A stretch of DNA of 64,000 nucleotides from Macrostomum lignano (taxonomy: Eukaryota), in assembly GCA_002269645.1 (NCBI GenBank), contig NIVC01002903.1, positions 1 through 64,000 on the forward strand. Direction: 5' to 3'. Numbering within the stretch: position 1 is the stretch's first letter; each line of letters begins with the position of its first letter. Made by a program: the position numbers and the translations under genes. Under the pieces are notes generated by a model. That model had not been told where the DNA came from and searched no databases. It was given only the letters and a program-made list of their open reading frames with translations. Of the stretch, positions 1 through 58,494 are shown piece by piece.

Positions 1-351
1 TTTAGGAAAAACAAAAACTTTAAGAATTCAAACAAATTTTTGAACAAATAATTTTTTCGACTTCTTCTTTCGCAATCAATGCAACAAATGATTATATAAG
101 AACAGTAAGTGTATTGTTGTCAGCTACAGTTGAAGGAATATATGATACGCAAATTAGAAGGCAAAAATGCTGAAAAGAATTTCAGCTGCTTTACTACTGT
201 CAGTAGTGTGCACTTACACATGCTCCTCTCTTGAAAGTGAAGGAAAAAGTTATTCGCATTAATTTGGTTTTTAATTATCTCCGTCATAAGGTGGAAAACT
301 TCGCATTGTTCTAACTGGGTAGCTTCCCGTGTCTAGCGACTGAATAGATTT

Positions 352-1820: not shown

Positions 1821-2087
1821 ACTGAACTGCCAGATTGGCGAAATTTGATGGGGTAATGCCTAATGTGTCCGAAGCAATGGTAATGCTATTGTACAAATTA
1901 TTCCATATTCCAAAGCAATTAGAAACCCACATACTTTAAACTGATTTCGAAATTCGCAAATAGAAAAATCTCTGCTTAATAAAGAAGAAATGACGGGGCG
2001 AAAGTGCTTCACAAAAATGGCGCCCAAAGACCACTCTAGTACACTACTTTAATACAACGGTGTCCTTGAGGGCACACATGGACTCAC

Positions 2088-2418
2088 TTCTGCTGCGTCT
2101 GCTTCGATAGCTTGGCAGCCTCGGCGGCCTCCTTCCTAGCCGCGAATTCCTCCCGCTTGAGGACCTCGCCGCTGCCGCGGTAGCCGAGTTCCACAAGTTG
2201 GCGAGCCAGCTCCTCATCCTTCGGTTTGAGTAGATATGATTTGCCGTTTGAACTTCTTGAACTTTGCCGAAGATTGAAAGTTTTAAATAAAAGACTGCTA
2301 TTTAACTAACCTCAAGGTAGTGCAGGTCCAAAGGAGTGACCTGGCTGTCTAGAAAGTCCTCATAGGTGTTGAACTCTGTCACAATGCTGTCCGCACCACC
2401 AACTGCTTCGTCTTCCAT
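2088..2418 (-). CDS. CFAP299: Cilia- and flagella-associated protein 299 (C4orf22 family), coding exons 1 (2311-2418) and 2 (2088-2218); remaining exons lie left of the window
   Basis: Spliced translation MEDEAVGGADSIVTEFNTYEDFLDSQVTPLDLHYLE|DEELARQLVELGYRGSGEVLKREEFAARKEAAE matches the recalled CFAP299 N-terminus (IVTQFNAYEDFLDSQIT..DLYYLEDETLARQLVELGYRG). 92-bp GT-AG phase-0 intron at 2219-2310; GTGAGT donor at 2087. Not in the ORF track. Confidence 0.92.
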
Positions 2419-3898
2419 TGCTTACTGAAAAGATCACGTTTTTCTGTTTTGATTTTTTTAAATTCAGCAAGAAACATTGAAATCTCATTTTGGCTGCATG
2501 GCTTATTGAAAAAAGTATCCATTGTGTGAATTTTTTAAGAAAAAACTTTCTATTGTCTTTTTATGTGCTGTATGGCATTAAATTTGCTTTCTTCCAAACT
2601 AAAAGTCAACCAGATAAAGTCAGAGTTTGATGCTTTTTAAGATTAATGAGAAAAACTATAATAGTAGCTGAATTGCTTCTTTTTTATGAATTATTTTTAA
2701 GAGCTATTATCTATAAATTAAAGTAAGAACTATCTTACAAATTTTACTAAAGTGCAACATGCTTATATATTATGTTATAATATAACCTTATGTGATTAAA
2801 TATTCGCTATGTATTTTCATTGATATCCTCCATATTGCGAGAGAGTACTAATTCTGCCTATTCAGGATAAAATGTATATCTCGTTTTCTTATTTCGAAAA
2901 ATTCGTTGTCTTTTTACAAATAACTCGTAATCTCACAGTGTGAGTGAAAACTTGAAAGGCTGCGATAAAATTGATTGAAGTAGTAAAAAATAAGACCGTG
3001 CCTAATAATAATATAGCTAACACATTTCTCGAGGTTGGTAATCGACGAAATTATTAAGTACGCTTGTAAAAACATTTTAGGTTTAAAAACATTTATTTTC
3101 CTAACAATTAAAAACGAACATATTGCAAAAATACGCATGTCATTGCTTTTTAAATAGTGAGGCGTACTTGGAAACGAATTTGCTACTTAGTATAATAAAG
3201 TTTTATGTAGCTTTTATTATTAGACCTAAACTCTGAGAGTAATACATAGTTTAGAAGTAATATTAACCCATGAAAACGTGTTTTTTAGTTTTTCTTTTTT
3301 ACGAAACTTAGATACAGATCCACGTTGGCCTTTAAAGCTAAATTTTTTTCGAAATAGTCACTTTTCTGTTCTGAAACCATAAAATAATAAGGGTTTGAGC
3401 AGTTCAATAATGACAACTAACATTATGATGATTGATATTTTGTACACAAATAATGAAATACATTATTGCATTCTTTTAAATGCAAATCACAAAGCAACTT
3501 GAAGTTTGCGTATAAAAAAGGGTCTATAAAATTGCAAAATTAAAAACTATTATCTCTATTTTTATTGTTTATGTAAATCAAGGGTAAAATAGCTGATAAA
3601 TCATAAGCTTAACTGGCATAATTTTATTTGTATTTTAAGTATTAAATACTTTTAATACCTCTATAAAGCATTTCTGCCAATAAGTTTGTTTTAGTTTGCA
3701 CTTGGAATTACGTTTAAACGTCATCTGCTGACGATTGTTCAAGGAATATTCAAAAGCCTTCCAGCGACTTATACTAATGATACTAAGTATATAAACGTAT
3801 ATAGGTTGGGTGAGTTTAGAAAGAATATGAGAGAATAATACTGATAATACAGAAAGAGTATAGCATACGTGCTCGTACGTGCATGTGCAAGAATAAAC

Positions 3899-4640
3899 AT
3901 GAGTAGCGTGTGGAACTGGGTTGGATCAAGAATTTCAACATCCTTTAGCTACTTTCTTGAGTTATTCGGATTAAAAAATAAAAACGGTACGTTTCTAGTC
4001 ATCGGCCTGGATAATGCCGGAAAAACGACTCTTTTGCGAAGGCTGAAAGAAGGCACTATGGGCACGCCGGTACCGACCTGGTATTCGTCGAAGTATGAAT
4101 TCTCCTTTGGTGGCATCTACTTCACAGCTTTTGATGTCGGGGGACATGAACAAGTGAGAAAGGTTTGGCGAACCTATTTTCCAGCAGTGGATGCGATCAT
4201 TTTTATTGTTGACGCCTCTGACCATCAAAGGTGCGTACATGTTTACATGGACAACCGTGTGTACAACGGTTAAAGCTAATTAAATCACGAATGTAAAGTA
4301 ATAATTTTCTTTTGAAAAACCACCGAATCGCACCAATTCCAAAAGGTTCTCCGAGGCGCGCGCCGAGCTCGACTCGCTATTGTCCGACATCTCGATCCCA
4401 GCTGACGCGCCGCTGCTGCTGCTGGGCAATAAGATCGACCGGCCGACAGCAGCGTCAGAGGAGGATCTGCGTCGCTGGCTTGGCGTGCAGCACCGGACAA
4501 CTGGGAAGCAGCTGGCTCAGGCTGGCGCCGCTGCGGGCATCGAGTTCCAGTCTAGGCCAATGGAACTGTTCATGTGCTCCGTTCTGCAGCAACAGGGTTA
4601 CGGGGAAGCGTTTCGATGGCTGACCAGTCACATGCGCTAA
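3899..4640 (+). CDS. SAR1: Divergent SAR1-family small GTPase, 208 aa, 2 exons (3899-4230, 4346-4640)
   Basis: G1 GLDNAGKTT, G3 DVGGHEQVRKVW, G4 LGNKID, Sar1-specific RPMELFMCSV..QGYGEAFRWL C-terminus, N-terminal amphipathic helix; phase-2 GT-AG intron 4231-4345 joins the frames. Confidence 0.9.
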
Positions 4641-4995
4641 TCCAGAGACGAAGGCGACTAATCCATAGTGACCTACATGTAATATGCTCCATGCGTATGC
4701 ACGTTTTATTTGAGATCCTTTAGTTGCTAACGTAGCTGTTGTATTGCCCCAAAATGCACATACATGTAATTTGTAATTTGCTAGCTTGTAAACGAGAGGC
4801 GTCTATAAATTAATAATGGTACTTCAGTAGTAATCAGTAGCATTTAGACTCAATTGTAATTTAGAATCTGCAAATTTTGCAGTACACCTAAGCAAGAACC
4901 TAAGAAAAACAAATTACAGGCCTAAAATTTGCATTGCGGGCGTTTGGATGATGTAGAACGTAGAAATGACACAATCGGATATATCGTCTAAAAAT

Positions 4996-6050
4996 TGCTA
5001 TCTGGGGGGATGCTTGCTATCTGGGGGGATGCTTGCTATGTGGGGGGATGCTTGCTATCTGGGGGGATGCTTGCTATCTGGGAGGATGCTTGCTATCTGG
5101 GGGATGCTTGCTATCTGGGGGATGCTTGTATCTGGGGGATGCTTGCTATCTGGGGGATGCTTGCTATCTGGGGGATGCTTGCTATCTGGGAGGATGCTTG
5201 CTATCTGGGGGATGCTTGCTATCTGGGAGGATGCTTGCTATCTAGGGGGATGCTTGCTATCTGGGGGGATGCTTGCTATCTGGGGGATGCTTGCTATCTG
5301 GGGGATGCTTGTTATCTGGGGGATGCTTGCTATCTGGGGGATGCTTGTTATCTGGGGGATGCTTGCTATCTGGGGGATGCTTGCTATCTGGGGATGCTTG
5401 CTATCTGGGGGATGCTTGCTATCTGGGGGATGCTTGCTATCTGGGGGATGCTTGTATCTGGGGGATGCTTGCTATCTGGGGGGATGCTTGCTATCTGGGG
5501 GGATGCTTGCTATCTGGGGGGATGCTTGCTATCTGGGAGGATGCTTGCTATCTGGGGGATGCTTACTATCTGGGAGGATGCTTGCTATCTGGGGGATGCT
5601 TGCTATCTGGGGGGATGCTTACTTTCTGGGGGATGCTTGCTATCTGGGAGGATGCTTGCTATCTGGCGGGATGCTTGCCATCTGGGGGGATGCTTACTAT
5701 CTGGGAGGATGCTTGCTATCTGGGTGGATGCTTACTATCTGGGAGGATGCTTGCTATCTGGGTGGATGCTTACTATCTGGGGGGATGCTTGCTATCTGGG
5801 AGGATGCTTGCTATCTGGGGGGATGCTTGCTATCTGGGGGGATGCTTGCTATCTGGGAGGATGCTTGCTATCTGGGTGGATGCTTACTATCTGGGGGGAT
5901 GCTTGCTATCTGGGAGGATGCTTGCTATCTGGGTGGATGCTTGCTATCTGAGAGGATGCTTGCTATCTGGGGGATGCTTGCTATCTGGGGGGATGCTTGC
6001 TATCTGGGGGGATGCTTGCTATCTGGGTGGATGCTTGCTCTCTTGGGGAT
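4996..6050. repeat. 16-18-bp minisatellite (ATGCTTGCTATCTGGG[G]nG)
   Basis: Direct periodicity with variable G-run length; the GDACYL/MLAIWG ORFs are artefacts. Confidence 0.95.
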
Positions 6051-6132
6051 GTTTTCTATTTAGGGGGAATGTCTGTTATCTTCGTGAAACATTATGTTAT
6101 TGTCTTTCTGTTGTTTAGAAAAAAAGAAAGAG

Positions 6133-6166
6133 CAGGGACTACTCAAACATGTTTGAGTAGTCCCTG
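6133..6166. mobile_element. 34-bp TIR-only hAT-like micro-element
   Basis: Perfect palindrome CAGGGACTACTCAAACA/TGTTTGAGTAGTCCCTG flanked by the identical 8-mer AGAAAGAG (6125-6132 and 6167-6174); CAGGG termini and an 8-bp TSD are hAT hallmarks. Confidence 0.75.
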
Positions 6167-7174
6167 AGAAAGAGATTCATAGTAAACATCTGTGTCCGTG
6201 ACAATTGTACTCGAACAAGGTGATTTATAAAACTGAAGAAGGAATTGGTTCTTAAGAAAATGAGCTTTTTTAATTGTTTTCCATAAATAAGTTTTGCTCC
6301 TTGCTTATTGGGCGCCCCGAAGGGGGGCACTAGATTGCTAGTCAAGTACAAAAAACTAATGACACGAAAACTCCCCTCAAAAATATGATCTATTCTACGA
6401 GCTAGATATGTACCACACTAAAATCTGACCAAACGTTAATCAATAAAACACCACAATATTTTATCCATCCCAACAATTCGAAAATAATTGGCTCAAATCA
6501 GATCTACTACTTAAAAGGCTAAAAAACTACACATAATTGAGCTTGAAAGAAAATACACCTACATCCTTTAAGCAACTAATTTTAAATAAACAATTCGAAA
6601 ACATTTCTAAGCTCTCCGTTTGATTCAGTATATTGACAGCGCTGCCTCGATGAAGTCAGAAAGTTCTGAGAGTAGCGCGCGGGCTTTTGCGGCATGTGTT
6701 GTCAGGTAAATTGCGTCATACAAGTGATACATGCGGCTTGCAAAATAAGCATTGGATATAAGCTGTGACTCAAAGGTAATCGAGCGGCTCGAGAAAGAAG
6801 TGCGCGAGGACGAGCAGAATGTGCAAAATCTGCTAATAATCTCTTAGTAGCGAAATCTCTAGAGACGGCGAACCAGACGGCTCGAAATCTCCATAGGCAG
6901 AGGGTGCTGCTGTATTGTTTAATCAAAACTTCAGACTCGATTTTTAGCATCAATAATAAACATAATGATTAATAAAAAACCGTTTTCAATAGCATTGTGC
7001 GTAACCTTTTCACTAACCTCAGAAACGCATTATGCAACTGCTGATAAGGGTGCTGATAAGGGTAACAAAAGTGACTATTTTTCACACCTCTTACATGCTA
7101 CTTGTCAGATGCTTTGAATCTGATAAACTTGCATCAAAGGAAACCATACCCCACTCACAGTTGCGGTTGACCTG

Positions 7175-8087
7175 GGGCCCGTGCTATAGAATACTCTTAA
7201 CTCCTAAATCCTTAAGAGTGTCCTAACTCCTAGCTCCTAGCTGGCTTTTCTGTGCTATAGAATCAAGAGTAAATTTAAGAGCTAGGAGGCTCCTTAAGGA
7301 CGTTAGGAGACTCCTGGGTGAATTTAGGAGACCTCTTTAGGGTTTGTCGCGTGCTATAGAATAAGGAGCGGAGCGTAGGAGCTAGGAGCTAGGAATTGCC
7401 GTTTAGGAGTGAGTTTTAGGAGTGCGTGTCCTATAGAAGGAGCGAAACTCATTTCTAGCTCCTAACTCCTAGTTAAGACTTCAAGGGCCAAATTTCACTC
7501 TTAGGTTATAGTAGGATCGTGTGATTCGTTTCTTTTTTCATGTTTTCGGACAGTGAGCTAGGCTCCGACGATGAGGGAGCTAATGATCGGCGACCCAGAC
7601 AATTTAAGCAGAGGATTAACTTTTTTGAAGAATATAATACTGTGTCACGATTTCGGCTCAATGAGAATCAACTCTTGGCGACATTCAAGGATGACCTCTC
7701 TCCACATTTCAATCTTGAGTGCTTTTGTTATTGTTGGCGAAAAGGCACCGAAAAGGTACACGTCCTTTCGAGCCGCAATCGCTTTAAGAAACGCAACTTT
7801 TTGGTTTGCTTGCATTGTTTGAATTCACGAATTGCTCCTATAATTACTCCTTAAGGTGCGTACATTTAGGAGTTTAATTAGCACGTAGATTGGCAGACTC
7901 CTTAGCCAATCGCCTTACACTCCTTAGAACTCCTCCTCACTCCTATGCTGCACTCCTTAAAACAACTCCTAGCTCCTAACTCTTGATTCTTGAACTCTAT
8001 AGCCCACAAAATCGATTCGCTCCTTGCTAGGAGCACTCCTGACTCCTAACTCCTTACTCTTTGCTCTTAAATCTATAGCATGGGCCC
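7175..8087. mobile_element. Non-autonomous PIF/Harbinger deletion derivative (913 bp)
   Basis: 16-bp TIRs GGGCCC(G/A)TGCTATAGA with 1 mismatch; 3-bp TSD CTG; many TAGGAG/CTCCTA subterminal motifs. Internal + fragment RPRQFKQRINFFEEY..SRFRL resembles a Harbinger transposase N-terminus; internal - ORF 7645-7815 (FLKAIAARKDVYLFGAFSPTITKALKIEMWREV) resembles the Myb/SANT-like partner. Confidence 0.88.
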
Positions 8088-8360
8088 CTGGTCGTCAAAA
8101 CTGCATATGAGCGTGTTTATGCTCCAATTAGTCGTGTCGTGTAAAACGAAGGGAAGTGACAGGCTATTTTTATATGCTATGCAATACAGTCGAGTATATT
8201 TGCAGTTGCTTTAAAAAAACAAATTAACGCACGCACAGCAGAGATTTTGAGTGACTAAAACAAAAAATCATAATATTGCTTTTAGTTTAGTAACAAGACC
8301 AAATACAGGCAGCGTAAAGAACCGAGTCCTTAAAGGGTGATGAGAACTGACCACGACCAG

Positions 8361-8822
8361 TTAAGATTCCGGGAGAAGATTCTGAGGGAGGGAGCGGAGG
8401 GGAAGATCAGATCGCACATTGATAAGAGATTCTCAAGTTTACATGTTCCATGAATGTTTGTTATTGTGTTCACAAGAAGTAATCAAGTCAAGCATTTACT
8501 TGAAGCAATTAGTACTTCAGTTAGATATAGAAACTCGCACAATGTCTTCAACAGTGATCGCCTTTGGCTGACTTCCAAATCGACTCAGTAGTTTAGCGGA
8601 AGCCGCCAGCGTTGCCAGAGTTGGTCTCGGCGGAGGCTGAGGATGGGGCTGAGGCTGATGGTGCACCCCTGCGCCCTCTCTGGCATTACTAGCCGGTTTT
8701 TCCGAGATGAAGCTGACTTCGGTTACGCGGCTATCATTGTGATCAAAGTTCTGCTGGTTGCTCTCATAGTCCACGTCGTCATCGATGGCGGCGCTCTCCA
8801 AGTCTGTGTTCGGCTTGGCCAT
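8361..8822 (-). CDS. Unidentified two-exon coding segment (8541-8822, 8361-8381); small gene or distal TTLL10 exons
   Basis: ORF MAKPNTDLESAAIDDD...AITVEDI, donor GTGCGA at 8540, strong pyrimidine acceptor CTCCCTCCCTCAG before 8381 giving NLLPES*; no recognisable domain. Confidence 0.4.
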
Positions 8823-10277
8823 GCTTGGTTGTGGCTTGGTGCTGGTGGACTTGGTTGTTCTGGTTCAAATTCCGATAAAATGCTGGATAAGTTACCCCGC
8901 TCGATATCAGACTAGCCTATAGAGGTCGGTCGATTCCTTCAAGGCCAATCGATATTAACAGGGGTGGGTGAACTAAAACGTGTACATTCTTGCAATGTAC
9001 ATCAAACGCACTAACCTTGGCTGTGAAAAGCGGCCTGTCCAACCGCCAAATTAGTTCAGTAGCTTGCTTAACCCGACTGACACGACGCCACCCCCTACTC
9101 CCACCGAGAATGTACATGCAGAACTTTGTGTACATAGTCGGCGGTAAGGATTAATTTCCCTCAGAGCTATAAATAGAATCATTCACTTCAGTTGAACAAC
9201 CCTTGACCTTGGCCTTGAGCCTTTGAGTAAAGACCATTTGCAAGCCATTTAACTTTCTTTAGAAGTGCAATAGCCCCAGTAATATTACATTAGATTCAGC
9301 AACATTGAAAACCGCCGCCCTAGACCCAGTGCACCTGAGTGAGAGTTGAAAACCTTCTGTCATATGCAGTTTAGTGAGCTGAAGTCGATCGCTCTGCCAA
9401 TGCTCTAGGGTGTTGGTTTTCAATGTTGCTGAGTACGCTCGCATGTATGCCAAAATCTTTTAAAAGCTTTGAATAATAAATTTACTACTGCTTGTTTATT
9501 TTTTTGAGAAAACAAGGAACTATTCTCTTCAAAAACCATAAAGACAAGATAAAGGAAAATCGCAGAGGAGCAACCAAAAAAACGCGCACCCAAAATGGCT
9601 TGAATTCACTTTCAATCGCAGCATTATTACCATTTGTACTTCGAGTAAAAAAGTAAAAATGCAAATTACACAAAGCTGCAGTTTGACATGTCACGCTTGC
9701 TACTTGTTGTAAGTAGTGCAATATGGAAGGACAATTGAAGCGCTAGCTTATTACAGATACACAGAAAAATTTTACGGAGCACAATACTAAACAGACTACT
9801 AAAAGTATCAGTATATTCTGCGTGCATAATTTGATTTTTAAAGCAGATTTTAATTCAATTAAAAATACCAGTCACGGGTCTCAAATTCGATTAAACTCCT
9901 TCATTGAATTGATATAGGGATGGCGATTTTTCGAAAATAATTATTATAGCTCCTATCGAGGACCGACAATTGGCAAGGGGATCGAACCAGGCATGCCAAA
10001 GTCGAGAAGCTCACTGTCTCATCGAAGTTTTTGCATGATTAAAAATGCTAATTTCTGCTCCAGCAGAAAGAATTAAAATGAGTTGGTTGACTTTGCGGCA
10101 AAATAAATTTTTTCTCAAGCCGATATCATTTCTTCTTGCAGAAAATTTTTCAGAGAGAAAAAGCTTGAATTTGCTTTCAACACCGTGAGTATAACATCTT
10201 TTATTGTTTCTCCTGTCGGCTGCCCTTGCCCTGCCTCCCTCGCTACTGTCCATGGCTGAATCGGTGGACCTACTCTG

Positions 10278-10650
10278 GCCTCATTTGCCCAGCGTATAGA
10301 TTGCAGTTGTCTATGGCCCAATCGATGGTGACCTCCTCTAGCCTCATTTGCCCAGTGTATACATTGCAGTTGTCTATGGCCCAATCGATGGTGACCTCCT
10401 TTAGCCTCATTTGCCCAGTGTATACATTGCAGTTGTCTATGGCCTAATCGATGGTGACCTCCTCTAGCCTCATTTGCCCAGCGTATAGATTGCAGTTGTC
10501 TATGGCACAATCGATGGTGACCTCCTCTAGCCTCATTTGCCCAGTGTATACATTGCAGTTGTCTATGGCCCAATCGATGGTGACCTTCTCTAGCCTCATT
10601 TGCCCAGTGTATACATTGCAGTTGTCTATGGCTCAATCGATGGTGACCTT
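10278..10650. repeat. 63-bp tandem repeat, about 6 copies
   Basis: GCCTCAT anchor recurs at 10278, 10341 and 10404. Confidence 0.9.
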
Positions 10651-10713
10651 CCCCGTCCTTGGCTTTGCCCCGGCTTGACAGTTCAAGAATGATCTAGCAC
10701 AGAAAGTGAATAA

Positions 10714-13700
10714 TCAAAATTTGCCAATAGATTTGACAACAGCTGCCTGACTGGCACTGCTTGGCTTGGTCTGTGACAGTGACAGACTACTTTTTGCTTT
10801 CTGCAGCCTGACCGCTACCGCGCCACGCTGCTGGCGCTGTGGCAAGGTCTGTTGCGTATGTTGCTTCTGCAGCTGTTGGGGTTGACTGTTCGACGAGCTA
10901 GCAGTTGATGGCCGACTCAGATGCAGATTCTCCGAGGATTTCGCGCTGGAGATTCCTGAATTTGCGTGCAGATTCAGTGCCGGCATGCTCCTAGTCCGGC
11001 TGCTCAGCTGCCCAGCCTTCTGCTGCCGCTCGACCAGAGTCGGCCTCGGCTGTCTGGGACGCGAGCTGCTGTCGTAGATCAGCTGGAATTCCTTTTGCTG
11101 TCCGGACAGTGGCAGAACTGGCTGACGGCGGAACACGCGGTCGAAAGCCTCGGCGGCGATGGCCAGGGCTTCGTGGACAACGCCAGGTATGATGGCTTCC
11201 TGGGTGGAGTTGTACAGGCCCAAGGCCGGAGTGGAGTTCAACTCCAGGAGCCACACCTGGATGGAGAGAAGCGATTGGAAGGCTTTTCAATGCTGGGTGG
11301 GCCGCATTTGTACAGTTGATGAGAATCTGCTACCTTCTATTCTTATATTCGTGCCCGTTTTGCTGACCCTTGGGCACACATGCGAGCAGGGGGACACGTA
11401 CGCGGGTACACGCTAACATCATATGTATGGTACAGTAGGCCCTGACTTTTCCATTACCTTCAGGCTACCGGACATTCCCCCTGTCATTTCCCCTCCCGCA
11501 TGCGTTTCCCCTTTCCCATTCCCCTTTCCCCTTCGGCGGCGCTTCCTCTTGGGACATTTCCCCTCCGGGATTTTTCCTCCGCCGTTTCCCCTCCGGCGTT
11601 TCCCTTCGAAATGAAAATTGACATGAAAGTGGAAGTGGCCGGGCACCTCCAGCCAGGCGTGCTGGTAGGCAGCTGCCAACCGCCGGAACCGCTGGTCGCA
11701 CGCCTTCCATATCCTGCGCTGGGCGGTTGGCTCTGCACCAGTTTTCGGACCGTTGATCGGCATGGTGATCAAACTAGAAGCGCCGGAGAGAAAACAGTGG
11801 AAGGGAATGTTGGAGGGGAAACGGCGGAAGGGAAACGGCGGAGGGGAATTGCCGGAGGGGAAGTGCCGGAGTGGCAATCTACTACTGTCCGGAGGGGAAG
11901 TGCCGGAGTGGCAATCTAATACTGTCCGGGGGGAAGTACCGGAGGGAATCTGTCCTCAAGGGGAAACACCGGAGGGGAAATGACGGAGGGGACGTGAATG
12001 ACTCGACAAGCGCGAGGCTAATTTGCGTGCCGGGACTCCAAAACTATTGTGAATCCGGGTACTCTGGCACAAGAGTCATACACGGTACGGTGCGATAACA
12101 AGCAATCCAGGGATTAAAGAAGACAAGATCTGAGCAAGAAGTATGCAGCAGGTGGACTCACCTTGCCGGATTCCTCCACCAGGAAATCGCAGCCGAACAG
12201 CTCAAAGCAGCCGCAGGCGGTGGCCAGCTTTGGTCGAGTCGCCGCGACAAGGTGCGCCAGCGCCTGACGGATGCTGACCTGCATCCCGGAGATAGCGAAG
12301 TCCTTGTCCAGTCCTAACTGTTCGCAGTGCTCGTTGATGTGGCAATTCAGCCTGTCGATTGACCAGATTGTCTCCTCCCGGGCCGCATCGTAGGCGGAGT
12401 CCTTCTGCTGCACGGCTTGATTGGTCAGGTGCAAGCAGAGATCGTCGCTTTTCAGGTCGAAGTCGCGGCAGGTGAGCCGGGCGTAGCCGGGGTGGTAGAA
12501 GGCCAGGCAGTTGAGGTTTAGCGTGGCCAGCACTAGCAGGTAGACGCGCAGATCGAATTTCTTACCGGCCAGCAGCAGTGGCCGCTCGATGTACTTTTGA
12601 ATGACCCAGTCGCGTCGCGGCTCGCCGTTCGTGCGCTCGTCGTTGAACAGATTACGGAAGTCGAGCTCGGCGCGCACCAGCTTGATGCCTTCGCCTCGGT
12701 TCAGCGTTGCGGGCTTGCAGATCCACAGGCTGCCGGACTCCGAGCTCATCCGGCGAAGGAACTGCAGCCTCTGCATCGCGGTGCGCAACACAAAGGTCGC
12801 CGGCAGGACGGCGTCGGCCGTTAGGCGGGGATGATCGCGGCAGCGGCTTACTTGACTTACTTGACTTAGCTGCAGGGTGGTCCGTAGACACAGCGGGGAG
12901 GCGAGGGTCGCCCATTCCGCTAGCCCCTGAAGGCCCGCAGACAGGCAGAGGCGTGGGGCCGGTCAGGGTGGTCCGCCGGTCCGTCCTGCAGCGTGATCTT
13001 CCGTTGGGAAGAAACTGGCTCGTCTAGTCGCCCGAAGGAACTGGATGAGCCGTGGGATGCTGTCGGGCTGGCAAACCTCGTCAATGGACGGGTTCGGCCC
13101 GAGGTAGCGTAGCCGGTCTCTGTTAAAGAAAGGGCAGTGACAGACAAAGTGCTGAGCATCTTCATTGTCGCACTCGCAAAAGGGGCAAATTTCGCTCTCG
13201 AGGTCGCCTCGGAGGAAGCAGTGCCTGGCGAGGTAGCCATGGCCGGTAAGGGTCATGACAAGGGCTCGAATATCCTTCCGATTCTGGTTCAGAAGGATGT
13301 TTCTGAGCCTGTGAGACGGGCAAGGAACCGCGGCACGAGATTGCCGGCAGTTTTGGGTGCCCGCCCATCTGTCCCTGTGGAGGGAGTCAGCCCAGTCGTC
13401 GATCTGACGATTGATGACTGTCAAGGGCATAGGGACCAGGGGGGCAGGGCCGAAAAAAGAGCCAGAGCCGCCCCTCTTGGCGAGGGTGTCTGCCAGCTCG
13501 TTCCCCGGAAACCCTGCGTGCCCTGGGATCCACTTCAGCCTGACAGTATTGCTTCTGGCCAGGAGGTTGAGCTGCCGGGCGCAGTCGGCGACTGTCCGGG
13601 AGTTCGTTGTGGTGTGGCAAAGGGCCTGTAAGGCCGCTTGGCTGTCGGAGTGGATGACAATAGTCTTTCCTCTCGTAACCTTGGCGTTTAGCTCTGCAGC

Positions 13701-16700
13701 GCAAGAGCTGATGGCAAGGACTTCGTTCTGGAAGACTGTGGAGAGTCTACCAGTGTGCTGGGCATGCGTGGCAATTACGCGGCCGTTGATGATGATGCAG
13801 ACCCCAAAGCCGGCGCGACCGTCTTTGATGGATCCGTCCGTGTAGCAATGGACCTCCTGGAAATTCCAGTGGTCATTGGCAGCATCCCTAGAGGGGATGG
13901 TGACCTTGTAGCGCTGAAAGAGGTTGAGAGTGCGGGGTTCGCCGTCAGATAGGACGTGGAGCCCGCCGCTGTCTCTCAAGTCCTTGAGGCAGAGGTCAGC
14001 GTGGGGCAGAAGCTTGCGCTTAGCCATGGCCCTATGGGGCTGGATTCGAATGCCAGCGTCAGCTAGACGGCGGGCAGTCTTAGCCGCTTCCCTGCGGACA
14101 AAGATGTCCAGCGGAGGAATGTTGAGGAAGGCGTTGAGGCCATCGTAAGGAGCAGACGGAGGGGCGCTCATGATCGTGCGACAAGCGCGCCCTTGCGCTC
14201 TCCTGAGAGCCTCTAGACAGGTCTTTATCTGCAGGGCGCTAGCCCAGATCAGGCCGCCATACGAGATAGCGGGCCTAACCATTGCAGTGTAGATCCACCA
14301 GAGGCGCTTGGGGGTGAGCCCCCAGGTGGTGCCGACGGCCCTGCGCAATTGCGCGAGGACTGCGAAGGCCTTTTTGGCTTTTGTTTGAACGTGGGGAGAC
14401 CAGTTCAGCCTGTGGTCCAGGGTAATACCCAGACATTTAGTCTGCTTGCAGAAGGGGATTTCCCTTCCGTAAAGCGTGAGCGGCCGAATCTGCCACTTGG
14501 TCCTGCTGGTGAACATGATCGCTGCGGTCTTAGTCTCAGAGAGCCTTAAACCACAGCGGTCCGCCCATTGCTCAGCAGCGTAGATGAAGTTCTGAAGAAG
14601 GTCCCTGAGGGTATCAGGGGACGGACCAGATGCCACCGCGGTGACATCGTCCGCATATCCAACTTTCAGAATGGGGTCAGGCCGAACATCCCGGAGGAGC
14701 TCATCGATGACCATATTCCAGAGAACTGGAGACAGCACCCCACCTTGCGGGCTACCTTTGCAGACGGGGACCGTCCTCTGGTAGCCCAGCAGACTGGCGG
14801 TGGCCGTGCGATGGCTGATCATGTACATGATCCATCTGGTGAGATGTGAGTGCGTTAGCCTCTCACAAAGAGCTCTTCGGAACGCCTCAAAGAGGACGTT
14901 ATCGAAGGCGCCAATGATGTCCAGGAAGATCCCCAGAGCAAAGCCACTACCAAGCACGGCCTTCTCGAGTTTATCGACCAGGACGTGCAGCGCGCTTTCA
15001 GTGGAGCGACCCGCCCGAAAAGCGTGCTGGTTCTCGCTGAGAGGTTTGTTCTTCAGCTCAACAGAGAGAAGGCGCCAAAGCACCAGTCTCTCCATCAGCT
15101 TGACCAGGGAGGAGGTCAAGCTGATCGGTCTGAAGGATTTGATAGAATGGTAGTCCGGGCGGCCTGGCTTAGGGATAAAGATCACCTTTGCCTCGGTCCA
15201 TGCCTGCGGGACATAACCAAGCGTGATGCATGCCCGAAGAAGGCTGCAAAGTTTGCGCAGGAAGCCTGGGCATTTAACCGCCTCTCTTAGAAGGGCCGGT
15301 ACAATGCCGTCGGGTCCTGGGGCTTTGAAAGGCTTGAAGGAATTTGCCGCTCTCACAATGCGGTCCTCCGTGATGATAGATGCAGCCAGCGCGTGACCTC
15401 CCTCCGAGTGATCCGGAGTGGTCTGGTTAGCTGGCTCGTTAGGGAAAAACGCAGTGAGCATTACATCAAGCGTTTCCCCTGGGTTGTCCGTGGACGTACC
15501 GTCGGTGCGTTTGACCGAGGAGAGCTTAGACATTTTGTCCAGCGTGAGCGCTTTCACAACTCTGGAGGTGGGGCGTGAGCCCTCTAGCTCCTCACAGTAT
15601 TGTCGCCATTTTTGAGCCTTTGCATTCCTAACCTGCCTTTTAAACTCATGAATTGCTTCATGATAGGCGGTTTGGTCTGCAGGGCTCTTAGTTTTAGTTG
15701 CTCTGCGGTGGAGTCTCTTAGCCCTGCGACGGAGGTTGCCGAGCTCGGGATTCCACCACGGCGCCGATTTTTTCCCTTTATAGGCTTTTAAAGGGCAGGA
15801 CGCCTCAAAGGCGGCGGTTAGCGTCTCTGTCAAAACAGTCGCGCACTCATCCGCCTCTCGGCACGACGTGATCGTGAATGGTTGGCCAGGAGACCGATGG
15901 AATTCCTTCAGGGCGAGCCCGAAGGTTTCCCAATCAGTATTTCTGGCGTTCCGTCTCCACATAACACGAGTTGCGCTACGCGCGGCCATTAGGTTGAAGG
16001 AGATGAACTTGTGATCCGATAGTGAGGACACTGGAAGCACCCGCCACGCCCCAATACTCTGGTAGAGTCTGGGCGTTGCGAGCGTAGCGTCGATCACCTC
16101 CGACCACCGTCCGTTGTCAAAGGTAGGGGTGGACCCAGAGTTGCAGAACTCGAGGGTCGTAGAGGCAACGTAGGCTAGGAGGTCTTCGCCTCTCTGATTA
16201 ATGCCAGTGCTGCCCCAGTGAGTGTGGTGGGCGTTGATGTCGCCGGCAACCATGAGCTCGTAGTTTTGGCAGAGCAGAGCTCTACCAGCGTAGCGAGGGC
16301 TCTGGGGACGACCGCAGCATCGCCTGGTAGGTAAACCGAGGCAATGAGGGTGGTCTTCCCAGGAAGAAGGTCCTCGGATTGGATGACGCAGATGTCCCTG
16401 TTGGACAGGTCCGATCTGAGCCACGCACTGAGCGTTTTGCTCGCAAAGATGCAAGCTCTGGGAGGCTGGTTGGCCTCGCGAGGGCAGCGGCACTGCGGCG
16501 CAGCGTCCTGAGCTCTGAGAGTCTCCGGTAGGAGCAGCTTGTTGGTCAGGCAGCGGGTGCCGGGCAGGCGGCTGATGATGTGCTGCCCGGGCCGCATCTT
16601 GCGGATGAACAGGTCGGCCTGGCAGCCATTGCACCAGATCAGAGTGAGCGGCGGCGCCGCCTGCGGCTGCTGCGTATGCGGCGACGAGAGAATGGCCGAG

Positions 16701-17223
16701 TCGGCCGCCTCTGGCCAGTTTAAGCGCCGCATCACCTCGCGGATTCTGCAGAGAGTCGCATGATTGAACCGCTCTTAAGCTTTGCACTGTCTGGAGAAAC
16801 CAAACGCAGTGGTCAAGTTCTTTTTTAGAAAATTTCTGGAGACAATTCGAATATTTTGGGACTGGGTGCAATCAAACTAGTTAAGCACGGGTTTGACCAA
16901 GGACTACTCAAGTAGGAATGGCACAGCTCGACTCATTGGCTTTATTAATCTATTTTATCATTCTTAGCTGATGACTGTAACAAAATGTGTTTTAGAGTGA
17001 CGTCATTCAGAGTGACGTCAAATTTCACGACAGCGCATCAAAGGCGATGGGTCACTTTCCTGACTCGTGCTCACATTTTTGCTCCGTACTGCGTGGCCAG
17101 GTAGCAGGAACAGGTGCGGCGTCCGCTGGCACCGCGACTGCTCCGAGGCGTCTTCCCGGCCATCGGCCGGTTTCTACCGGTGGACAGCCGGGTCAGCGGC
17201 TCTGCGGCGCCCTCGTCCTCCAT
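10714..17223 (-). CDS. TTLL10: TTLL10-type tubulin polyglycylase interrupted by a retrotransposon; exons 17075-17223, 16483-16745 + 12162-12838, 10714-11256; pre-insertion ORF 543 aa
   Basis: WICKP..RGEGI, QKYIERPLL..GKKFDLRVY, GYARLT, HLTNQAVQ, FELFGCDFL, VWLLELNSTP..IPGVVHE, and N-terminal LIWC..SRLPGTRCLTNK..LR align in order with recalled TTLL10. All introns are GT-AG and phase-consistent; removing 12848-16482 plus one TSD copy restores the frame. Confidence 0.9.
11464..12005. mobile_element. MITE/foldback-like element in the TTLL10 intron
   Basis: Left arm is rich in TTTCCCCTCC motifs and the right arm in GGAGGGGAA; imperfect inverted repeat GTCATTTCCCCTCC / GGAGGGGAAATGAC near the ends; no TSD found. 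Confidence 0.45.
12848..16482 (-). mobile_element. 5'-truncated non-LTR retrotransposon (APE-RT-RNase H; LOA/R1-like, I group)
   Basis: APE motifs SVYLP, GDINAHH..WGS, IDATL, SDHK; RT motifs FRPISL, QGGVLSP, YADD; RNase H YTDGS, DSQAAL, WIPGH..GNELAD; C-terminal CPFC..H..CHC; stop at 12963; 3' tail (TAAGTCAAG)2TAA; 9-bp TSD GCCGCTGCC at 12839-12847 and 16483-16491; one frameshift near 16264-16267. Confidence 0.95.
16998..17020. promoter_or_regulatory. Two perfect CRE palindromes (TGACGTCA) in TTLL10 intron 1
   Basis: TGACGTCA at 16998-17005 and 17013-17020; function untested. Confidence 0.35.
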
Positions 17224-18527
17224 GGCGTGAAGAGGCAGAATCTCTTCACTGCTCACTTAACTCAATTGGCCCTCTCTGAGTTCTGTCCAAGGCCTGTCAC
17301 TTGTTGTAAACTTTAAGTATGCAGTGGGTTCCCACCCTCTTATCTATTCTTTCTCCTGTTAGTCAGTTCCCTTCTCATTTTGGTGGGGATTACTTAGCGA
17401 GGCGGAGTGACTGTGCGGGGGGCGGCTTTCGGATTGGCCTGCGAAAGAAGACAGAGAGCCAGGGAGAGATCAGAAGGGGGAGTTTCAGTGGGGGCAGAGA
17501 AAATGACAAGACGCGCAGGCTTTGGCTCTCACAAGCGCTGCCCAGACATGCAGATATTTGAGATCGAAGCCAACCGGCTGCTCAAAATGGAAGGGCAGAC
17601 ATTTCACAGGGCAGTTTTTTACTGTCGCCATTCCCTAAGCAAGCGATCCGGCAGAGCCAGAGCACCAGAAACCAGACAAACTTGCTCAGAAGAATGAGCT
17701 GAGCCAGCTCAGGCGTTGCCGGGCAGGCGGTAGGATAATTATCCCAATGCCAGCTGTCTCAAGAATCTGCAGAATTCAGAGCGATTCGTTGTAAACCCTC
17801 GAGGGGGGGGGTTCGCTAAGATCTTTGAATTTTTTGTCAACCCTTAGTTTACCAAGATAACGCTAGCGAATCTTCACTTGCTACTGGTAGTAGTGTAGCT
17901 AGGACGCAGCTTTTGACAAGCAGATTTTATTCCTTATAACTTTTTTTATAACTACGTGCTTAGCTCGTAAAGTCCCGAAGGGTCCCATCGGACTGACTTC
18001 AAAGCACTGAAATTGGATGATGAAGTACGCAGATTTTTTATAGTCTACAATATCTCTTTAAGGCCTGTAACATCTCTTTTAGGTCTCAAATGCTACATCC
18101 CCTCTTGGAATGAAAATAGGTGAATTAATAGTTATGCAATGAATTAGTGACCCCAAGCTTACTTCCAGATACATTTTTACACTCTGTAGTTGCATTGAAA
18201 AGTGCACTATGGAAATATTGTAACCATGCTGGACTCAGATGAGGCAATCCTCACTGATACCCGTTGCTGCCGTCAACCTGACGTGCTTTTCCTGCTCACC
18301 TCGACTGAGGGTTCACTCATCAGAATTCCGACAAGCTTTTGAAAGGCGCGCTGGCCAAGGTAATTCCGGATTATAGAATGGGAGTGGAAGGTTTGGGATA
18401 AAATCACGGGAGAACTTCGTAGGTGTTAGAAAACATGATAGCTTATAGAGAGAGGAGAGCATGCAGAGAGAAGACGGAGAAACGAAGATTGGAATCGTAA
18501 AAGATTCGATAAAATCAGTTAAAATTT

Positions 18528-18541
18528 GTTGCCATGGTAAC
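18528..18541. promoter_or_regulatory. RFX X-box GTTGCCATGGTAAC
   Basis: Matches the X-box consensus; lies 1.3 kb upstream of the ciliary gene TTLL10. Confidence 0.6.
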
Positions 18542-18980
18542 CAGCTGGGGGATTTCGAAGAAAATACACTATTATTTGTTCCGTCAATTGATCCTTAAGC
18601 AACTCGACGACTGTCTGAGTCTCTGAATTGAGTTCCATAGACTCACCCGGGCCATGATGAACATGGGAACTACCTGTTTCCTTTCCCTTCTCTCTCTCTC
18701 CCTCTTTCCAGCCTTTTTCTGCATAGCAACAGGCATAGCAACAGGCCCGTCGTCTCCAAGCGCCCTGCCAGCTCAAAAGTAACTGAAAACTGTTGGTGGC
18801 TGCACAGCCAGACTCAGCCTGAGTACTCTGGGCTATTATTTTCTTTCCAGCCTCCGCCCTCTCCATCTCTCTCTCTCTCTCTCTTTGTCGCTGAGTCTAC
18901 TAAAAAGTTCCTTCGGGTTTTGGAATCTGTATTTTTTTGTCTGGTCACTAAAGATCTTCTCGCCGACTTGGTGCAGTGCG

Positions 18981-19499: not shown

Positions 19500-20585
19500 G
19501 ACTGAGAGTGAATGGATAAGAGTGAATGGGAGAGAGTGAATTGGAGAGAGTGAATAGGAGAGAGTGAATAACTAAAAAATGAATGACTGAGAGTGAATTG
19601 GAGAGAGTGAATAGGAGAGAGTGAATGGCTGAGAGTGATTGGCTGAGAGTGAATGGCTGAGAGTGAATGGCTGAGAGTGAATGGCTGAGAGTGAATGGCT
19701 GAGAGTGATTGGCTGAGAGTGAATGGCTGAGAGTGAATGGCTGAGAGTGAATGGCTGAGAGTGAATGGCTGAGAGTGAATGGCTGAGAGTGAATGGCTGA
19801 GAGTGAATGGCTGAGAGTGAATGGCTGAGAGTGAATGGCTGAGAGTGAATGGCTGAGAGTGAATGGCTGAGAGTGAATGGCTGAGAGTGAATGGCTGAGA
19901 GTGAATGGCTGAGAGTGAATGGCTGAGAGTGAATGGCTGAGAGTGAATGGCTGAGAGTGAATGGCTGAGAGTGAATGGCTGAGAGTGAATGGCTGAGAGT
20001 GAATGGCTGAGAGTGAATGGCTGAGAGTGAATGGCTGAGAGTGAATGGCTGAGAGTGAATGGCTGAGAGTGAATGGCTGAGAGTGAATGGCTGAGAGTGA
20101 ATGGCTGAGAGTGAATGGCTGAGAGTGAATGGCTGAGAGTGAATGGCTGAGAGTGAATGGCTGAGAGTGAATGGCTGAGAGTGAATGGCTGAGAGTGAAT
20201 GGCTGAGAGTGATTGGCTGAGAGTGAATGGCTGAGAGTGAATGGCTGAGAGTGAATGGCTGAGAGTGAATGGCTGAGAGTGAATGGCTGAGAGTGAATGG
20301 CTGAGAGTGAATGGCTGAGAGTGAATGGCTGAGAGTGAATGGCAGAGAGTGAATGGCTGAGAGTGAATGGCTGAGAGTGAATGGCAGAGAGTGAATGGCT
20401 GAGAGTGAATGGCTGAGAGTGAATGGCTGAGAGTGAATGGCTGTGAGTGAATAGGAGGGAGTGAATGGCTGAGAGTGAATGGCTGAGAGTGAATGGCTGA
20501 GAGTGAATGGCTGAGAGTGAATGGCTGAGAGTGAATGGCTGAGAGTGAATGGCTGAGAGTAAATGGTTGAGAGTGACTGAGAGAG
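19500..20585. repeat. 14-bp minisatellite (GAGAGTGAATGGCT)n
   Basis: Highly homogeneous array starting just after a CAG|GTGAGC donor at 19471/19472. Confidence 0.95.
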
Positions 20586-20659
20586 AGTGAATATAAGGGT
20601 GTCGTAAGAATGTGAATGAATGTAGATGTAAGAGTGGATGTACGAATGGAGGATTGTGA

Positions 20660-20930: not shown

Positions 20931-21474
20931 GGCAAGTGAGGGTACTAGGCTATGTAATAAATAGGTAAAAATGCGCACGCCATGTCAGCGGAAGCAGAGA
21001 CGGGCCAGAGACTCGGGCAGGCGGTTAAGCGGAAGGAGACACGTGTGGGGAGAAATCATAAAATCTGTCAAAGTTACGCTCATCAATCTGTGCTGTCATG
21101 CTGAAATGCAGCAGAATCTGGTTGCCAGTGGCAACCGAAGCAGAAAATTCCTAGCTCTTGTTGACTTTGAGAAGCCACTACGCCTCTCTGAATTATTGTC
21201 TGAATAATTGCTAAGCGTATTTCTATCTACATTCTCTATTAGGGGTTGAGCTATTTTGAGCATTGATGAGGCCGCCTCACGGCTGCTGAGGGGTTTTGTC
21301 AAGCTGACGGGTCCGTGGAAGAGGGACGAAAGTGAGCAGAGGCGGCAAAAACAAGTGACAGACAGAATGAAGACAATTAAACTTGGGAGAGATGTGCGTT
21401 GCTGGGCCATTGTACTAGTATTTAGGATGGTTACGAGAAGGTCAGCCAGATTGACTGGTAGATTAGTAGGGACA

Positions 21475-22950
21475 GGCAGAGGGCAGACAGACAGATGGCA
21501 GACAGGCAGAGAGGCAGAGGGCAGACAGGCAGAGAGGCAGAGAGGCAGAGGGCAGAGAGGCAGAGGCCAGAGAGACAGAGAGGCAGAGGGCAGAGAGGCA
21601 GAGGGCAGAGAGGCAGAGAGGCAGAGGGCAGAGAGGCAGAGAGGCAGAGAGGCAGAGGGCGGAGAGGCAGAGGGCAGAGAGGCAGAGAGGCAAAGGGCGG
21701 AGAGGCAGAGGCCAGAGAGGCAGAGGCCAGAGAGACAGAGGGCAGAAGGCAGAGGGGCAGAGAGGCAGAGGGCAGAGAGGCAGAGGCCAGAGAGACAGAG
21801 AGGCAGAGGGCAGAGAGGCAGAGGGCAGAGAGGCAGAGAGGCAGAGGGCAGAGAGGCAGAGAGGCAGAGGGCAGAGAGGCAGAGAGGCAAAGGGCGGAGA
21901 GGCAGAGGGCAGAGAGGCAGACAGGCAGAGGGCAGAGTGCAGAGAGGCAGAGAGGCAGAGGGCAGAGAGGCAGAGAGGCAGAGAGGCATAGGGCGGAGAG
22001 GCAGAGGGCAGAGAGGCAGAGAGGCAGAGGGCAGAGAGGCAGAGAGGCAGAGGGCAGAGAGGCAGAGAGGCAGAGAGGCATAGGGCGGAGAGGCAGAGGG
22101 CAGAGAGGCAGAGAGGCAAAGGGCGGAGAGGCAGAGGGCAGAGAGGCAGACAGGCAGAGGGCAGAGTGCAGAGAGGCAGAGGGCAGAGAGGCAGAGGCCA
22201 GAGAGACAGAGAGGCAGAGGGCAGACAGGCAGAGGGCAGAGAGGCAGCGAGGCAGAGGGCAGAGGGCAGAGTGGCAGAGAGGCAGAGAGGCAGAGAGGCA
22301 GAGAGGCAGAGGGCAGAAGGCAGAGAGGCAGAGAGGCAGAGGGCAGAGAGGCAGACAGGCAGAGGGCAGAGAGGCAGACAGGCAGAGGGCAGAGTGGCAG
22401 AGAGGCAGAGGGCAGAAGGCAGAGGGCAGAGAGGCAAAGGGCAGAGAGGCAGAGGGCAGAGAGGCAGAGGGCAGAGAGGCAGAGAGGCATAAGGCAGAAG
22501 GCAGAGGGCAGAGAGACAAAGGGCAGAGAGGCAGAGGGCAGAGAGGCAGAGAGGCAGAGGGCAGAGGGCAGAAGGCAGAGGGCAGAGAGGCAGACAGGCA
22601 GAGGGCAGAGTGGCAGAGAGGCAGAAGGCAGAGAGGCAGAGAGGCAGAGGGCAGAGCGCAGACAGGCAGAGAGGCAGAGGGCAGAAGGCAGAGGGCAGAG
22701 AGGCAGACAGGCAGAGGGCAGAGTGGCAGAGAGGCAGAGGGCAGTAGGCAGAGGGCAGAGAGGCAGACAGGCAGAGGGCAGAGTGGCAGAGAGGCAGAGG
22801 GCAGAAGGCAGAGGGCAGAGAGGCAAAGGGCGGAGAGGCAGAGGGCAGAGGCAGAGGGCAGAGAGGCAGAGGGCAGAGAGGCAGAGGGCAGAGAGGCAAA
22901 GGGCGGAGAGGCAGAGGTCAGAGAGGCAGAGGGCAGACAGGCAGAGGAGG
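21475..22950. repeat. Compound GGCAGAG/GGCAGAGA satellite
   Basis: Mixed 7/8-bp units; the long RQRAE/LCLSA ORFs are artefacts. Confidence 0.95.
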
Positions 22951-23002: not shown

Positions 23003-26550
<3,548 letters not shown>

Positions 26551-58448: not shown

Positions 58449-58494
58449 CTGCTCGGGCTGGGGTGGGGCGGCGGCTGGGATGAAGGGTCGCGGT

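What the first reader, a model, noticed from the sequence alone, without database searches (positions are those of the whole stretch)
12839..16491. Recent LINE insertion into the middle of a TTLL10 coding exon
A perfect 9-bp TSD (GCCGCTGCC) flanks the element. The empty allele reads ...AQDAAPQCRCRDHPRLTADAVLPATFVLR... in frame, and all TTLL catalytic motifs remain intact, so the insertion is young. TTLL10 elongates glycine chains on axonemal tubulin, so this is a candidate natural loss-of-function allele in a ciliated animal, possibly tolerated because of duplicated homeologs (inference). The supplied 1302-aa ORF wrongly includes about 200 aa of out-of-frame TTLL10 intron and exon sequence.
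Basis: seen in the sequence. Interest (0 to 1): 0.7.

Follow-up and report, generated by a model that had tools for sequence, protein, structure and literature searches.

The report
LINE insertion breaking one TTLL10 copy
In the flatworm Macrostomum lignano, a 3.6-kb dead LINE retrotransposon sits in the middle of a coding exon of one of three near-identical copies of a TTLL10-type tubulin glycylase gene; it is a real but ordinary example of a jumping gene knocking out a redundant gene copy in a recently duplicated genome.

Summary
The window is contig NIVC01002903.1:1-64000 of the M. lignano Mlig_3_7 assembly. A 3,635-bp LINE (12848-16482, minus strand) is flanked by a perfect 9-bp duplication, GCCGCTGCC in gene orientation. 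Two other distinct copies of the locus in the same assembly (three contigs) carry this 9-mer once and no LINE. These are true empty sites.

With the LINE removed, the window copy gives an intact three-exon, 543-aa reading frame with a TTL domain. Its best named relatives are TTLL10 polyglycylases (215-226 bits, against 108-114 for TTLL3).

The LINE has partial endonuclease, reverse transcriptase and RNase H domains, which fits the I group. It lacks about the first 53 codons of ORF2 and everything upstream, and it has one 1-nt frameshift, so it cannot move on its own. As it stands the gene should encode 137 TTLL residues plus 102 LINE-derived residues and no catalytic core.

The host reading frame shows no other damage (9 synonymous and 3 non-synonymous window-specific changes), so the insertion post-dates the split of the three copies. 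Two intact copies remain.

Corrections: about 130 aa, not 200, of the 1302-aa ORF is host sequence, and "TTLL10" is a family-level assignment. The event is ordinary, so interest is low.

The parts
16483..16491 (-). Upstream (5') copy of the 9-bp target-site duplication, GCCGCTGCC in gene orientation
   Evidence: Exact match found. It is present once in the empty sites of L001, L002 and L003.
12848..16482 (-). 5'-truncated non-LTR retrotransposon (LINE) with partial endonuclease, reverse transcriptase (YADD) and RNase H domains and a C-terminal Cys/His motif. It is in the same orientation as the host gene.
   Evidence: Pfam domains. tblastn of full-length relatives starts at ORF2 residue ~54. 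Single copy in the window and absent from L001-L003.
12848..12869 (-). LINE 3' tail: about 2.3 copies of TAAGTCAAG, not poly(A), directly abutting the downstream duplication copy
   Evidence: Read. A related element, L005, shares the terminus CCCTGCAGCTAAGTCAA.
16262..16298 (-). Interval holding a 1-nt frameshift in the LINE endonuclease domain, probably in the A4 run at 16264-16267
   Evidence: Relatives P0011 and P0012 align in one frame for 16486-16262 and in another for 16298-12972. This could be a real mutation or a homopolymer error of the assembly.
12966..16274 (-). Open part of LINE ORF2 (1,103 codons with no stop)
12839..12847 (-). Downstream (3') copy of the 9-bp target-site duplication
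17075..17223 (-). TTLL10-like gene, exon 1 (ATG at 17223, GT donor after 17075)
   Evidence: tblastn of P0294 and direct reading.
16492..16745 (-). TTLL10-like gene, exon 2, part upstream of the insert (with the 9-mer at 16483-16491 this is 263 nt)
   Evidence: The frame runs on into the LINE and stops at 16175 (ORF 16175-16735).
12162..12847 (-). TTLL10-like gene, exon 2, part downstream of the insert. It encodes the ATP-grasp core (ICKP..GEGI, QKYIERPLLL..KFDLRVY, HLTNQ, FELFGCDF).
   Evidence: with invariant columns.
10714..11256 (-). TTLL10-like gene, exon 3 (WLLELNSTPAL to the stop codon)

Best explanation
A LINE of the RNase-H-bearing I group inserted by target-primed reverse transcription into exon 2 of one of the three homeologous copies of a TTLL10-family gene in Macrostomum lignano. 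TTLL10 enzymes are tubulin polyglycylases. The insertion happened after the three copies diverged. Reverse transcription stopped early, so the new copy lacks the 5' UTR, ORF1 and about the first 53 codons of ORF2. It is flanked by a 9-bp target-site duplication and cannot move by itself. The insert lies after codon 137 of 543, in a variable loop upstream of the whole ATP-grasp core. The unspliced reading frame yields a 239-aa product (137 TTLL residues plus 102 LINE-derived residues) that cannot be an active ligase, so this copy is a null. The loss is tolerated because two intact copies, and further TTLL10-like paralogs, remain. Shown here: the insertion, the duplication, the empty sites, the truncation, the intact host frame and the family assignments. 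Inferred: loss of function, tolerance through redundancy, and the relative age.
For: Identity of the window: it equals NIVC01002903.1:1-64000 of GCA_002269645.1, because L004 is the exact reverse complement of window 1-18822.

Empty sites: they lie on NIVC01001263.1, NIVC01002904.1 and NIVC01001921.1, with the 9-mer present once. L001 and L003 are the same copy (0 mismatches in 4,718), so there are three distinct copies. Their pairwise SNP distances are 1.05-1.27%. This matches the three subgenomes S, L1 and L2 and the 1.1% coding SNP rate reported for this line (PMC10733133).

Host reading frame: with the LINE removed it is 543 aa with no stop or indel. Window-specific changes are 9 synonymous and 3 non-synonymous, and none falls in the TTL core.

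LINE: domains; truncation and frameshift; 3' terminus shared with a relative that has ORF1 and ORF2. Fragments 94-100% identical at the amino-acid level occur in other M. lignano gene models, so the family has other close copies in this genome.

TTLL10 family: in an exhaustive phmmer search, the named hits among those looked up (ray, herring, scallop, oyster, frog, marsupial, lizard, Schistosoma) are almost all called polyglycylase TTLL10. BLASTP gives 215-226 bits to TTLL10 proteins against 108-114 to TTLL3. The closest solved structure is the glycylase TTLL3, 5vlq.

Annotation: no TTLL gene is annotated on the window contig.
Against: No reads, RNA data or population data were available. It is therefore not shown whether the insertion is fixed in its subgenome. 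Whether the copy is still transcribed is also unknown, as is whether some transcripts skip the insert. Which subgenome (S, L1 or L2) carries it is undetermined too. No DNA of other copies of this LINE family could be retrieved, so the age of the element itself is not measured. The synonymous excess on the window branch comes from an unrooted three-copy comparison. Part of that branch may belong to lineages that were always functional.
Confidence: 0.9

Rival explanations
1. Assembly artefact: the LINE was joined into this contig by a chimeric read or a collapse of repeats, and the true haplotype has an intact exon.
For: Mlig_3_7 is a long-read assembly of a neopolyploid in which 36% of the assembly length lies in scaffolds classed as chimeric (PMC10733133). 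The assembly also holds redundant contig ends (L001 = L003). No reads could be checked.
Against: A chimeric join would not produce a perfect 9-bp duplication of a sequence that is single-copy in the empty sites. It would also not place one junction exactly at the family's conserved 3' terminus and tail, or give the 5' truncation typical of LINEs. Both flanks also carry the same run of window-specific SNPs, so they come from one haplotype.
Confidence: 0.03
2. Old insertion: this copy has long been a pseudogene and the LINE is not recent.
For: In the ~1.3-kb block around the insert the window is the most diverged of the three copies (12 consecutive window-unique sites). The LINE carries one frameshift.
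Against: The host frame has no stop or indel in 1,632 nt. Window-specific changes are 9 synonymous to 3 non-synonymous, with none in the catalytic core. The two duplication copies are identical and 1,103 LINE codons are still open. The insert is absent from both other copies.
Confidence: 0.05
3. The interrupted gene is not a tubulin polyglycine elongase. It could be a lineage-specific TTLL10-like paralogue with another activity, so its loss says nothing about glycylation.
For: The protein is only 33-38% identical to named TTLL10 proteins, whereas Schistosoma TTLL10 is 44% identical to lizard TTLL10. M. lignano has at least four TTLL10-like gene groups. One close hit is named 'probable beta-tubulin polyglutamylase' by its source.
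Against: Of the M. lignano groups, this one scores highest against vertebrate TTLL10 (226 bits against 190, 179 and 117). Named best hits across animals are almost all TTLL10.
Confidence: 0.2
4. The insertion is a polymorphism segregating in the cultured line, or in one of two chromosome copies, rather than fixed in its subgenome.
For: The LINE family has near-identical fragments elsewhere in the genome, which suggests recent activity. Nothing here measures frequency.
Against: The contig is a consensus of reads from pooled worms of a highly inbred line, in which heterozygosity within each subgenome is reported as negligible.
Confidence: 0.15

Closest known systems
I-group non-LTR retrotransposons (clades I, Nimb, Ingi, Loa, Tad1, R1, Outcast)
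   Same: The domain order is AP-endonuclease, reverse transcriptase, then RNase H downstream of the RT, with a C-terminal Cys/His motif. A full-length relative has ORF1 plus ORF2. The 3' tail is a short tandem repeat rather than poly(A). The copy also shows a target-site duplication and 5' truncation. RNase H in animal LINEs is reported for this group (PMC4640811).
   Different: The clade within the group was not determined because no reference RT set was available. The relative's ORF1 matches no Pfam family. The closest full-length protein found is only 61% identical.
TTLL10, the tubulin polyglycylase that elongates glycine chains on axonemal tubulin
   Same: It has a TTL/ATP-grasp domain with all residues that are invariant across the TTLL10 and TTLL3 proteins aligned here. 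Best named hits are TTLL10 from many animal phyla. The function of TTLL10 is taken from PMC12340829.
   Different: It is shorter (543 aa) and only 33-38% identical to named TTLL10 proteins. It is one of several TTLL10-like paralogues in this species. Its activity is untested.
Gene loss (fractionation) by transposon insertion in young polyploids
   Same: One of three ~1%-diverged homeologous copies is disrupted while the others stay intact. Large insertions and deletions are reported as the main difference between M. lignano subgenomes.
   Different: Here the event is seen at a single gene. No subgenome bias or expression consequence was measured.

Membership tests
LINE / non-LTR retrotransposon (I group) | Reverse transcriptase domain with an intact active-site motif | tested here: met
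   RVT_1 at 7.3e-31. YADD is seen in the translation.
LINE / non-LTR retrotransposon (I group) | AP-type endonuclease N-terminal to the RT | tested here: met
   Exo_endo_phos_2 at 2.5e-16. Only the C-terminal part is present because of the 5' truncation and frameshift.
LINE / non-LTR retrotransposon (I group) | RNase H domain downstream of the RT | tested here: met
   RNase_H at 3.2e-14, residues 876-1004 of the translated ORF. The group definition is quoted from PMC4640811.
LINE / non-LTR retrotransposon (I group) | Marks of target-primed reverse transcription: target-site duplication, 3' tail at the junction, no terminal repeats, frequent 5' truncation | tested here: met
   The 9-bp duplication is verified against empty sites. 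Tail. Truncation.
LINE / non-LTR retrotransposon (I group) | Placement of the RT within a named clade by phylogeny | not tested
   No reference library of named LINE clades was available, and homologues in the protein database carry no transposon names.
TTLL10 (tubulin polyglycylase) | TTL / ATP-grasp domain with conserved nucleotide- and metal-binding residues | tested here: met
   PF03133 at 1.2e-39. The invariant K179, D233, R235, H274, N277, D355, E368 and N370 (P0294 numbering) are shared with TTLL10 and TTLL3. The window copy is identical in this region.
TTLL10 (tubulin polyglycylase) | Closer to TTLL10 than to TTLL3/8 or the glutamylases | tested here: met
   215-226 bits to nine named TTLL10 proteins against 108-114 bits to three TTLL3 proteins. 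Lizard TTLL10 scores this protein above TTLL3 in the reverse comparison.
TTLL10 (tubulin polyglycylase) | One-to-one orthology | tested here: inconclusive
   At least four TTLL10-like groups exist in M. lignano. This group scores best against vertebrate TTLL10, but no rooted tree was built.
TTLL10 (tubulin polyglycylase) | Elongates glycine chains from existing monoglycines on tubulin tails | not testable with these tools
   This needs an enzyme assay. The property is as described in PMC12340829.

The most novel reading that the evidence does not exclude
The insertion may mark a very early step of subgenome gene loss in a neopolyploid animal, driven by a LINE family that is still active. The ~1.3-kb block of window-unique variants centred on the insert sits between blocks where the window matches one or the other homeolog. 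This could mean that the 3.6 kb of non-homologous sequence locally blocks the gene conversion or recombination that otherwise shuffles the three copies.
Probability: 0.15. Interest if true: 0.45.

Novelty: new member of a known kind. Interest (0 to 1): 0.25.

Why it matters
The finding gives a cleanly documented natural null of one homeolog of a cilia-related tubulin-modifying enzyme gene, in a laboratory flatworm that has transgenesis tools. It also shows that an I-group LINE family has been active since the recent genome duplication. The window-specific SNPs and the two junctions make a ready PCR marker for telling the three subgenome copies apart. Beyond that it is an expected event: transposon-sized insertions and deletions are already known to be the main difference between the M. 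lignano subgenomes.

Tried and rejected
DNA of other copies of the LINE was sought so the insertion could be dated. The element is single-copy in the window and absent from L001-L003. The M. lignano proteins that contain near-identical fragments (P0018) are not on record with contigs, and neither is the 1302-aa ORF itself. The age therefore rests on indirect evidence.

The word-indexed protein search returned only TTLL3-named hits. This would have misled the family assignment. The exhaustive search plus cluster names corrected it to TTLL10.

The subgenome class of the contig was sought in the supplement of PMC10733133 and not found. Literature searches for the gene identifiers found nothing.

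An Rfam scan of the whole window found nothing.

The idea that the insert could be an intron was rejected, because its ends are CTCGCG...GTAA, with no GT...AG.
Full report
**What is in the sequence**

On the + strand, GGCAGCGGC occurs at 12839-12847 and again at 16483-16491. Both the gene and the insert lie on the minus strand, where the repeat reads GCCGCTGCC.

The 3,635 bases between the repeats (12848-16482) carry three Pfam domains: an endonuclease C-terminal part (Exo_endo_phos_2, 2.5e-16), a reverse transcriptase (RVT_1, 7.3e-31) and an RNase H (3.2e-14).

In gene orientation the insert ends in CTGCAGC-TAAGTCAAG-TAAGTCAAG-TAA, directly against the downstream repeat. It begins abruptly inside the endonuclease domain.

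**Empty-site test**

Joining the two flanks with one copy of the 9-mer gives an open frame reading ...LRAQDAAPQCRCRDHPRLTADAVLPATFVLRTAMQ.... A single Pfam TTL match (1.2e-39) spans the junction.

A protein search found Macrostomum lignano protein BOX15_Mlig002769g1 (P0001), 99% identical and containing exactly that peptide. Its contig (L001, NIVC01001263.1) is collinear with about 26 kb of the window.

The alignment breaks only at the insert. L001 6868-9408 matches window 19025-16483, and L001 9400-10731 matches window 12847-11557. The two pieces overlap by the 9 bases GCCGCTGCC, which L001 has once.

Two more annotated loci of the same assembly (L002 and L003, encoding P0294 and P0293) show the same empty site and no LINE.

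**Where the window comes from**

A 101-aa neighbouring gene of the window (8517-8822) is on record only on NIVC01002903.1 of GCA_002269645.1, at the same coordinates. The fetched locus is the exact reverse complement of window 1-18822.

The window is therefore part of the Mlig_3_7 assembly of the inbred DV1 line. The filled and empty sites sit on different contigs of one assembly. No TTLL gene is annotated on the window contig.

**How many copies**

L001 and L003 have 0 mismatches in 4,718 aligned bases, so they represent one copy twice. That leaves three distinct copies with pairwise SNP distances of 1.05-1.27% over 4.7 kb.

In the 1,476 nt of exons 2 and 3 that were compared, the copies differ at 15, 16 and 7 positions.

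This fits the published picture for the line: three homeologous subgenomes (S, L1, L2), an SNP rate of 2.2% genome-wide and 1.1% in coding sequence, and long insertions and deletions as the main difference between them (PMC10733133).

**The host gene**

In the window the gene has three exons on the minus strand:
- Exon 1 is 17223-17075.
- Exon 2 is 16745-12162, interrupted by the LINE.
- Exon 3 is 11256-10714.

The splice sites are canonical. With the LINE and one 9-mer removed, the frame is 543 aa with only the terminal stop. The insert lies after codon 137, in a loop where this gene has seven extra residues compared with its paralogues. It is upstream of every conserved ATP-grasp motif.

Read as it stands, the TTLL frame continues in frame into the LINE endonuclease frame and stops at 16175. 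The predicted product is 239 aa, made of 137 TTLL residues and 102 LINE-derived residues. Loss of function is inferred from this, not measured.

**Is the gene TTLL10?**

The word-indexed search gave only TTLL3-named hits, and the closest solved structure is the glycylase TTLL3 (5vlq, 1.5e-23).

The exhaustive phmmer search was more informative. Its best hits outside Macrostomum have E-values of 1e-57 to 1e-60. Wherever these hits carry a name, it is almost always 'polyglycylase TTLL10'. They come from lizard, ray, herring, arowana, frog, marsupial, scallop, pearl oyster and Schistosoma.

BLASTP gives 215-226 bits to these proteins against 108-114 bits to TTLL3. Among the M. lignano TTLL10-like groups, this one scores best against lizard TTLL10.

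Family membership is therefore supported. One-to-one orthology and enzyme activity remain open. The role of TTLL10 in elongating glycine chains on axonemal tubulin is taken from PMC12340829.

**The LINE**

Full-length relatives (P0011 and P0012, 58-61% identical) align from their residue ~54 onward. Residues 54-128 align in one frame (16486-16262) and residues 115 to the end align in another (16298-12972).

The copy therefore lacks about 53 codons of ORF2 and everything upstream. It also has one 1-nt frameshift, most likely in the A4 run at 16264-16267. That frameshift could be a real mutation or a homopolymer error of the long-read assembly.

A related element on a Logan contig (L005) has a 525-aa ORF1, a 1232-aa ORF2 and the same 3' terminus CCCTGCAGCTAAGTCAA. 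This fixes the 3' boundary independently.

RNase H downstream of the RT in an animal LINE points to the I group (PMC4640811). The clade within that group was not determined.

Fragments 94-100% identical at the protein level occur inside other M. lignano gene models (P0013, P0018). The family therefore has other close copies in this genome.

**Age**

LINEs do not excise precisely, so absence from the other two copies means the insertion followed their divergence.

On the window branch of the three-copy comparison there are 9 synonymous and 3 non-synonymous changes, and none lies in the TTL core. There are no stops or indels.

The two duplication copies are identical, and 1,103 LINE codons remain open.

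All of this fits a recent event, but no absolute date or copy-to-consensus divergence could be obtained.

**The 1302-aa ORF**

From 16871 to 16483 the ORF reads 42 aa of intron 1 and 88 aa of exon 2 out of frame, about 130 aa in total. The next ~69 aa are LINE endonuclease sequence in the wrong frame, up to the frameshift. About 200 aa are therefore spurious, but only about 130 of them are host sequence.

**Verdict**

The finding is real and correctly interpreted, and the kind of event is ordinary for this genome. A misassembly is very unlikely given the duplication, the tail, the truncation and the shared haplotype SNPs on both flanks. Only reads could exclude it formally.

Noticed in passing
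window 18809-10801 (LINE excluded), compared with L001 and L002: Variable sites among the three homeologous copies fall in blocks. There are 22 consecutive L002-unique sites (18809-17046), then 12 consecutive window-unique sites spanning the LINE site (16940-12477), then 14 consecutive L001-unique sites in intron 2 (11849-11569). This looks like recombination or gene conversion between homeologs.
   Followed up: partly
L001 (NIVC01001263.1, contig end) and L003 (NIVC01002904.1, contig end): The two loci are identical over 4.7 kb (0 mismatches, 3 gap columns) and both lie at contig ends. The assembly probably represents one copy twice, and the two gene models differ (489 aa and 322 aa).
   Followed up: partly
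window 16175-16745 (minus strand): The TTLL reading frame continues in frame into the LINE endonuclease frame. A transcript of this copy would encode a 239-aa TTLL-LINE chimera before the first stop.
   Followed up: partly
window 342-1819, 4995-6068, 19502-20592, 21474-22947, 24399-25042, 26622-28610, 37720-38995, 58479-59532 and many more: The window is packed with long minisatellite arrays (units of 8-63 bp, up to ~195 copies). Several lie in the intergenic and intronic DNA around the TTLL gene, and their lengths differ between homeologs.
   Followed up: no
window 51985-53747 (+ strand): A gene for a Bin3/MePCE-type methyltransferase (Pfam Bin3 9.9e-36, plus an N-terminal SAM-binding part), with a minisatellite (52524-52966) in the gap between the two coding parts.
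   Followed up: partly
proteins P0013, P0016, P0018 (UniProt models of an earlier M. lignano assembly): These gene models fuse fragments of this LINE family to unrelated host domains (leucine-rich repeats, a protein kinase, a peptidase S8). They are either annotation chimeras or further LINE copies inside or next to genes.
   Followed up: no
window 8517-8822 (minus strand): A 101-aa open reading frame with no Pfam match is annotated in all three homeologous copies. It differs by 2-4 residues between them.
   Followed up: no
L005:548-2125: ORF1 (525 aa) of the related full-length LINE from Logan run ERR14788467 matches no Pfam family at E <= 0.01.
   Followed up: no
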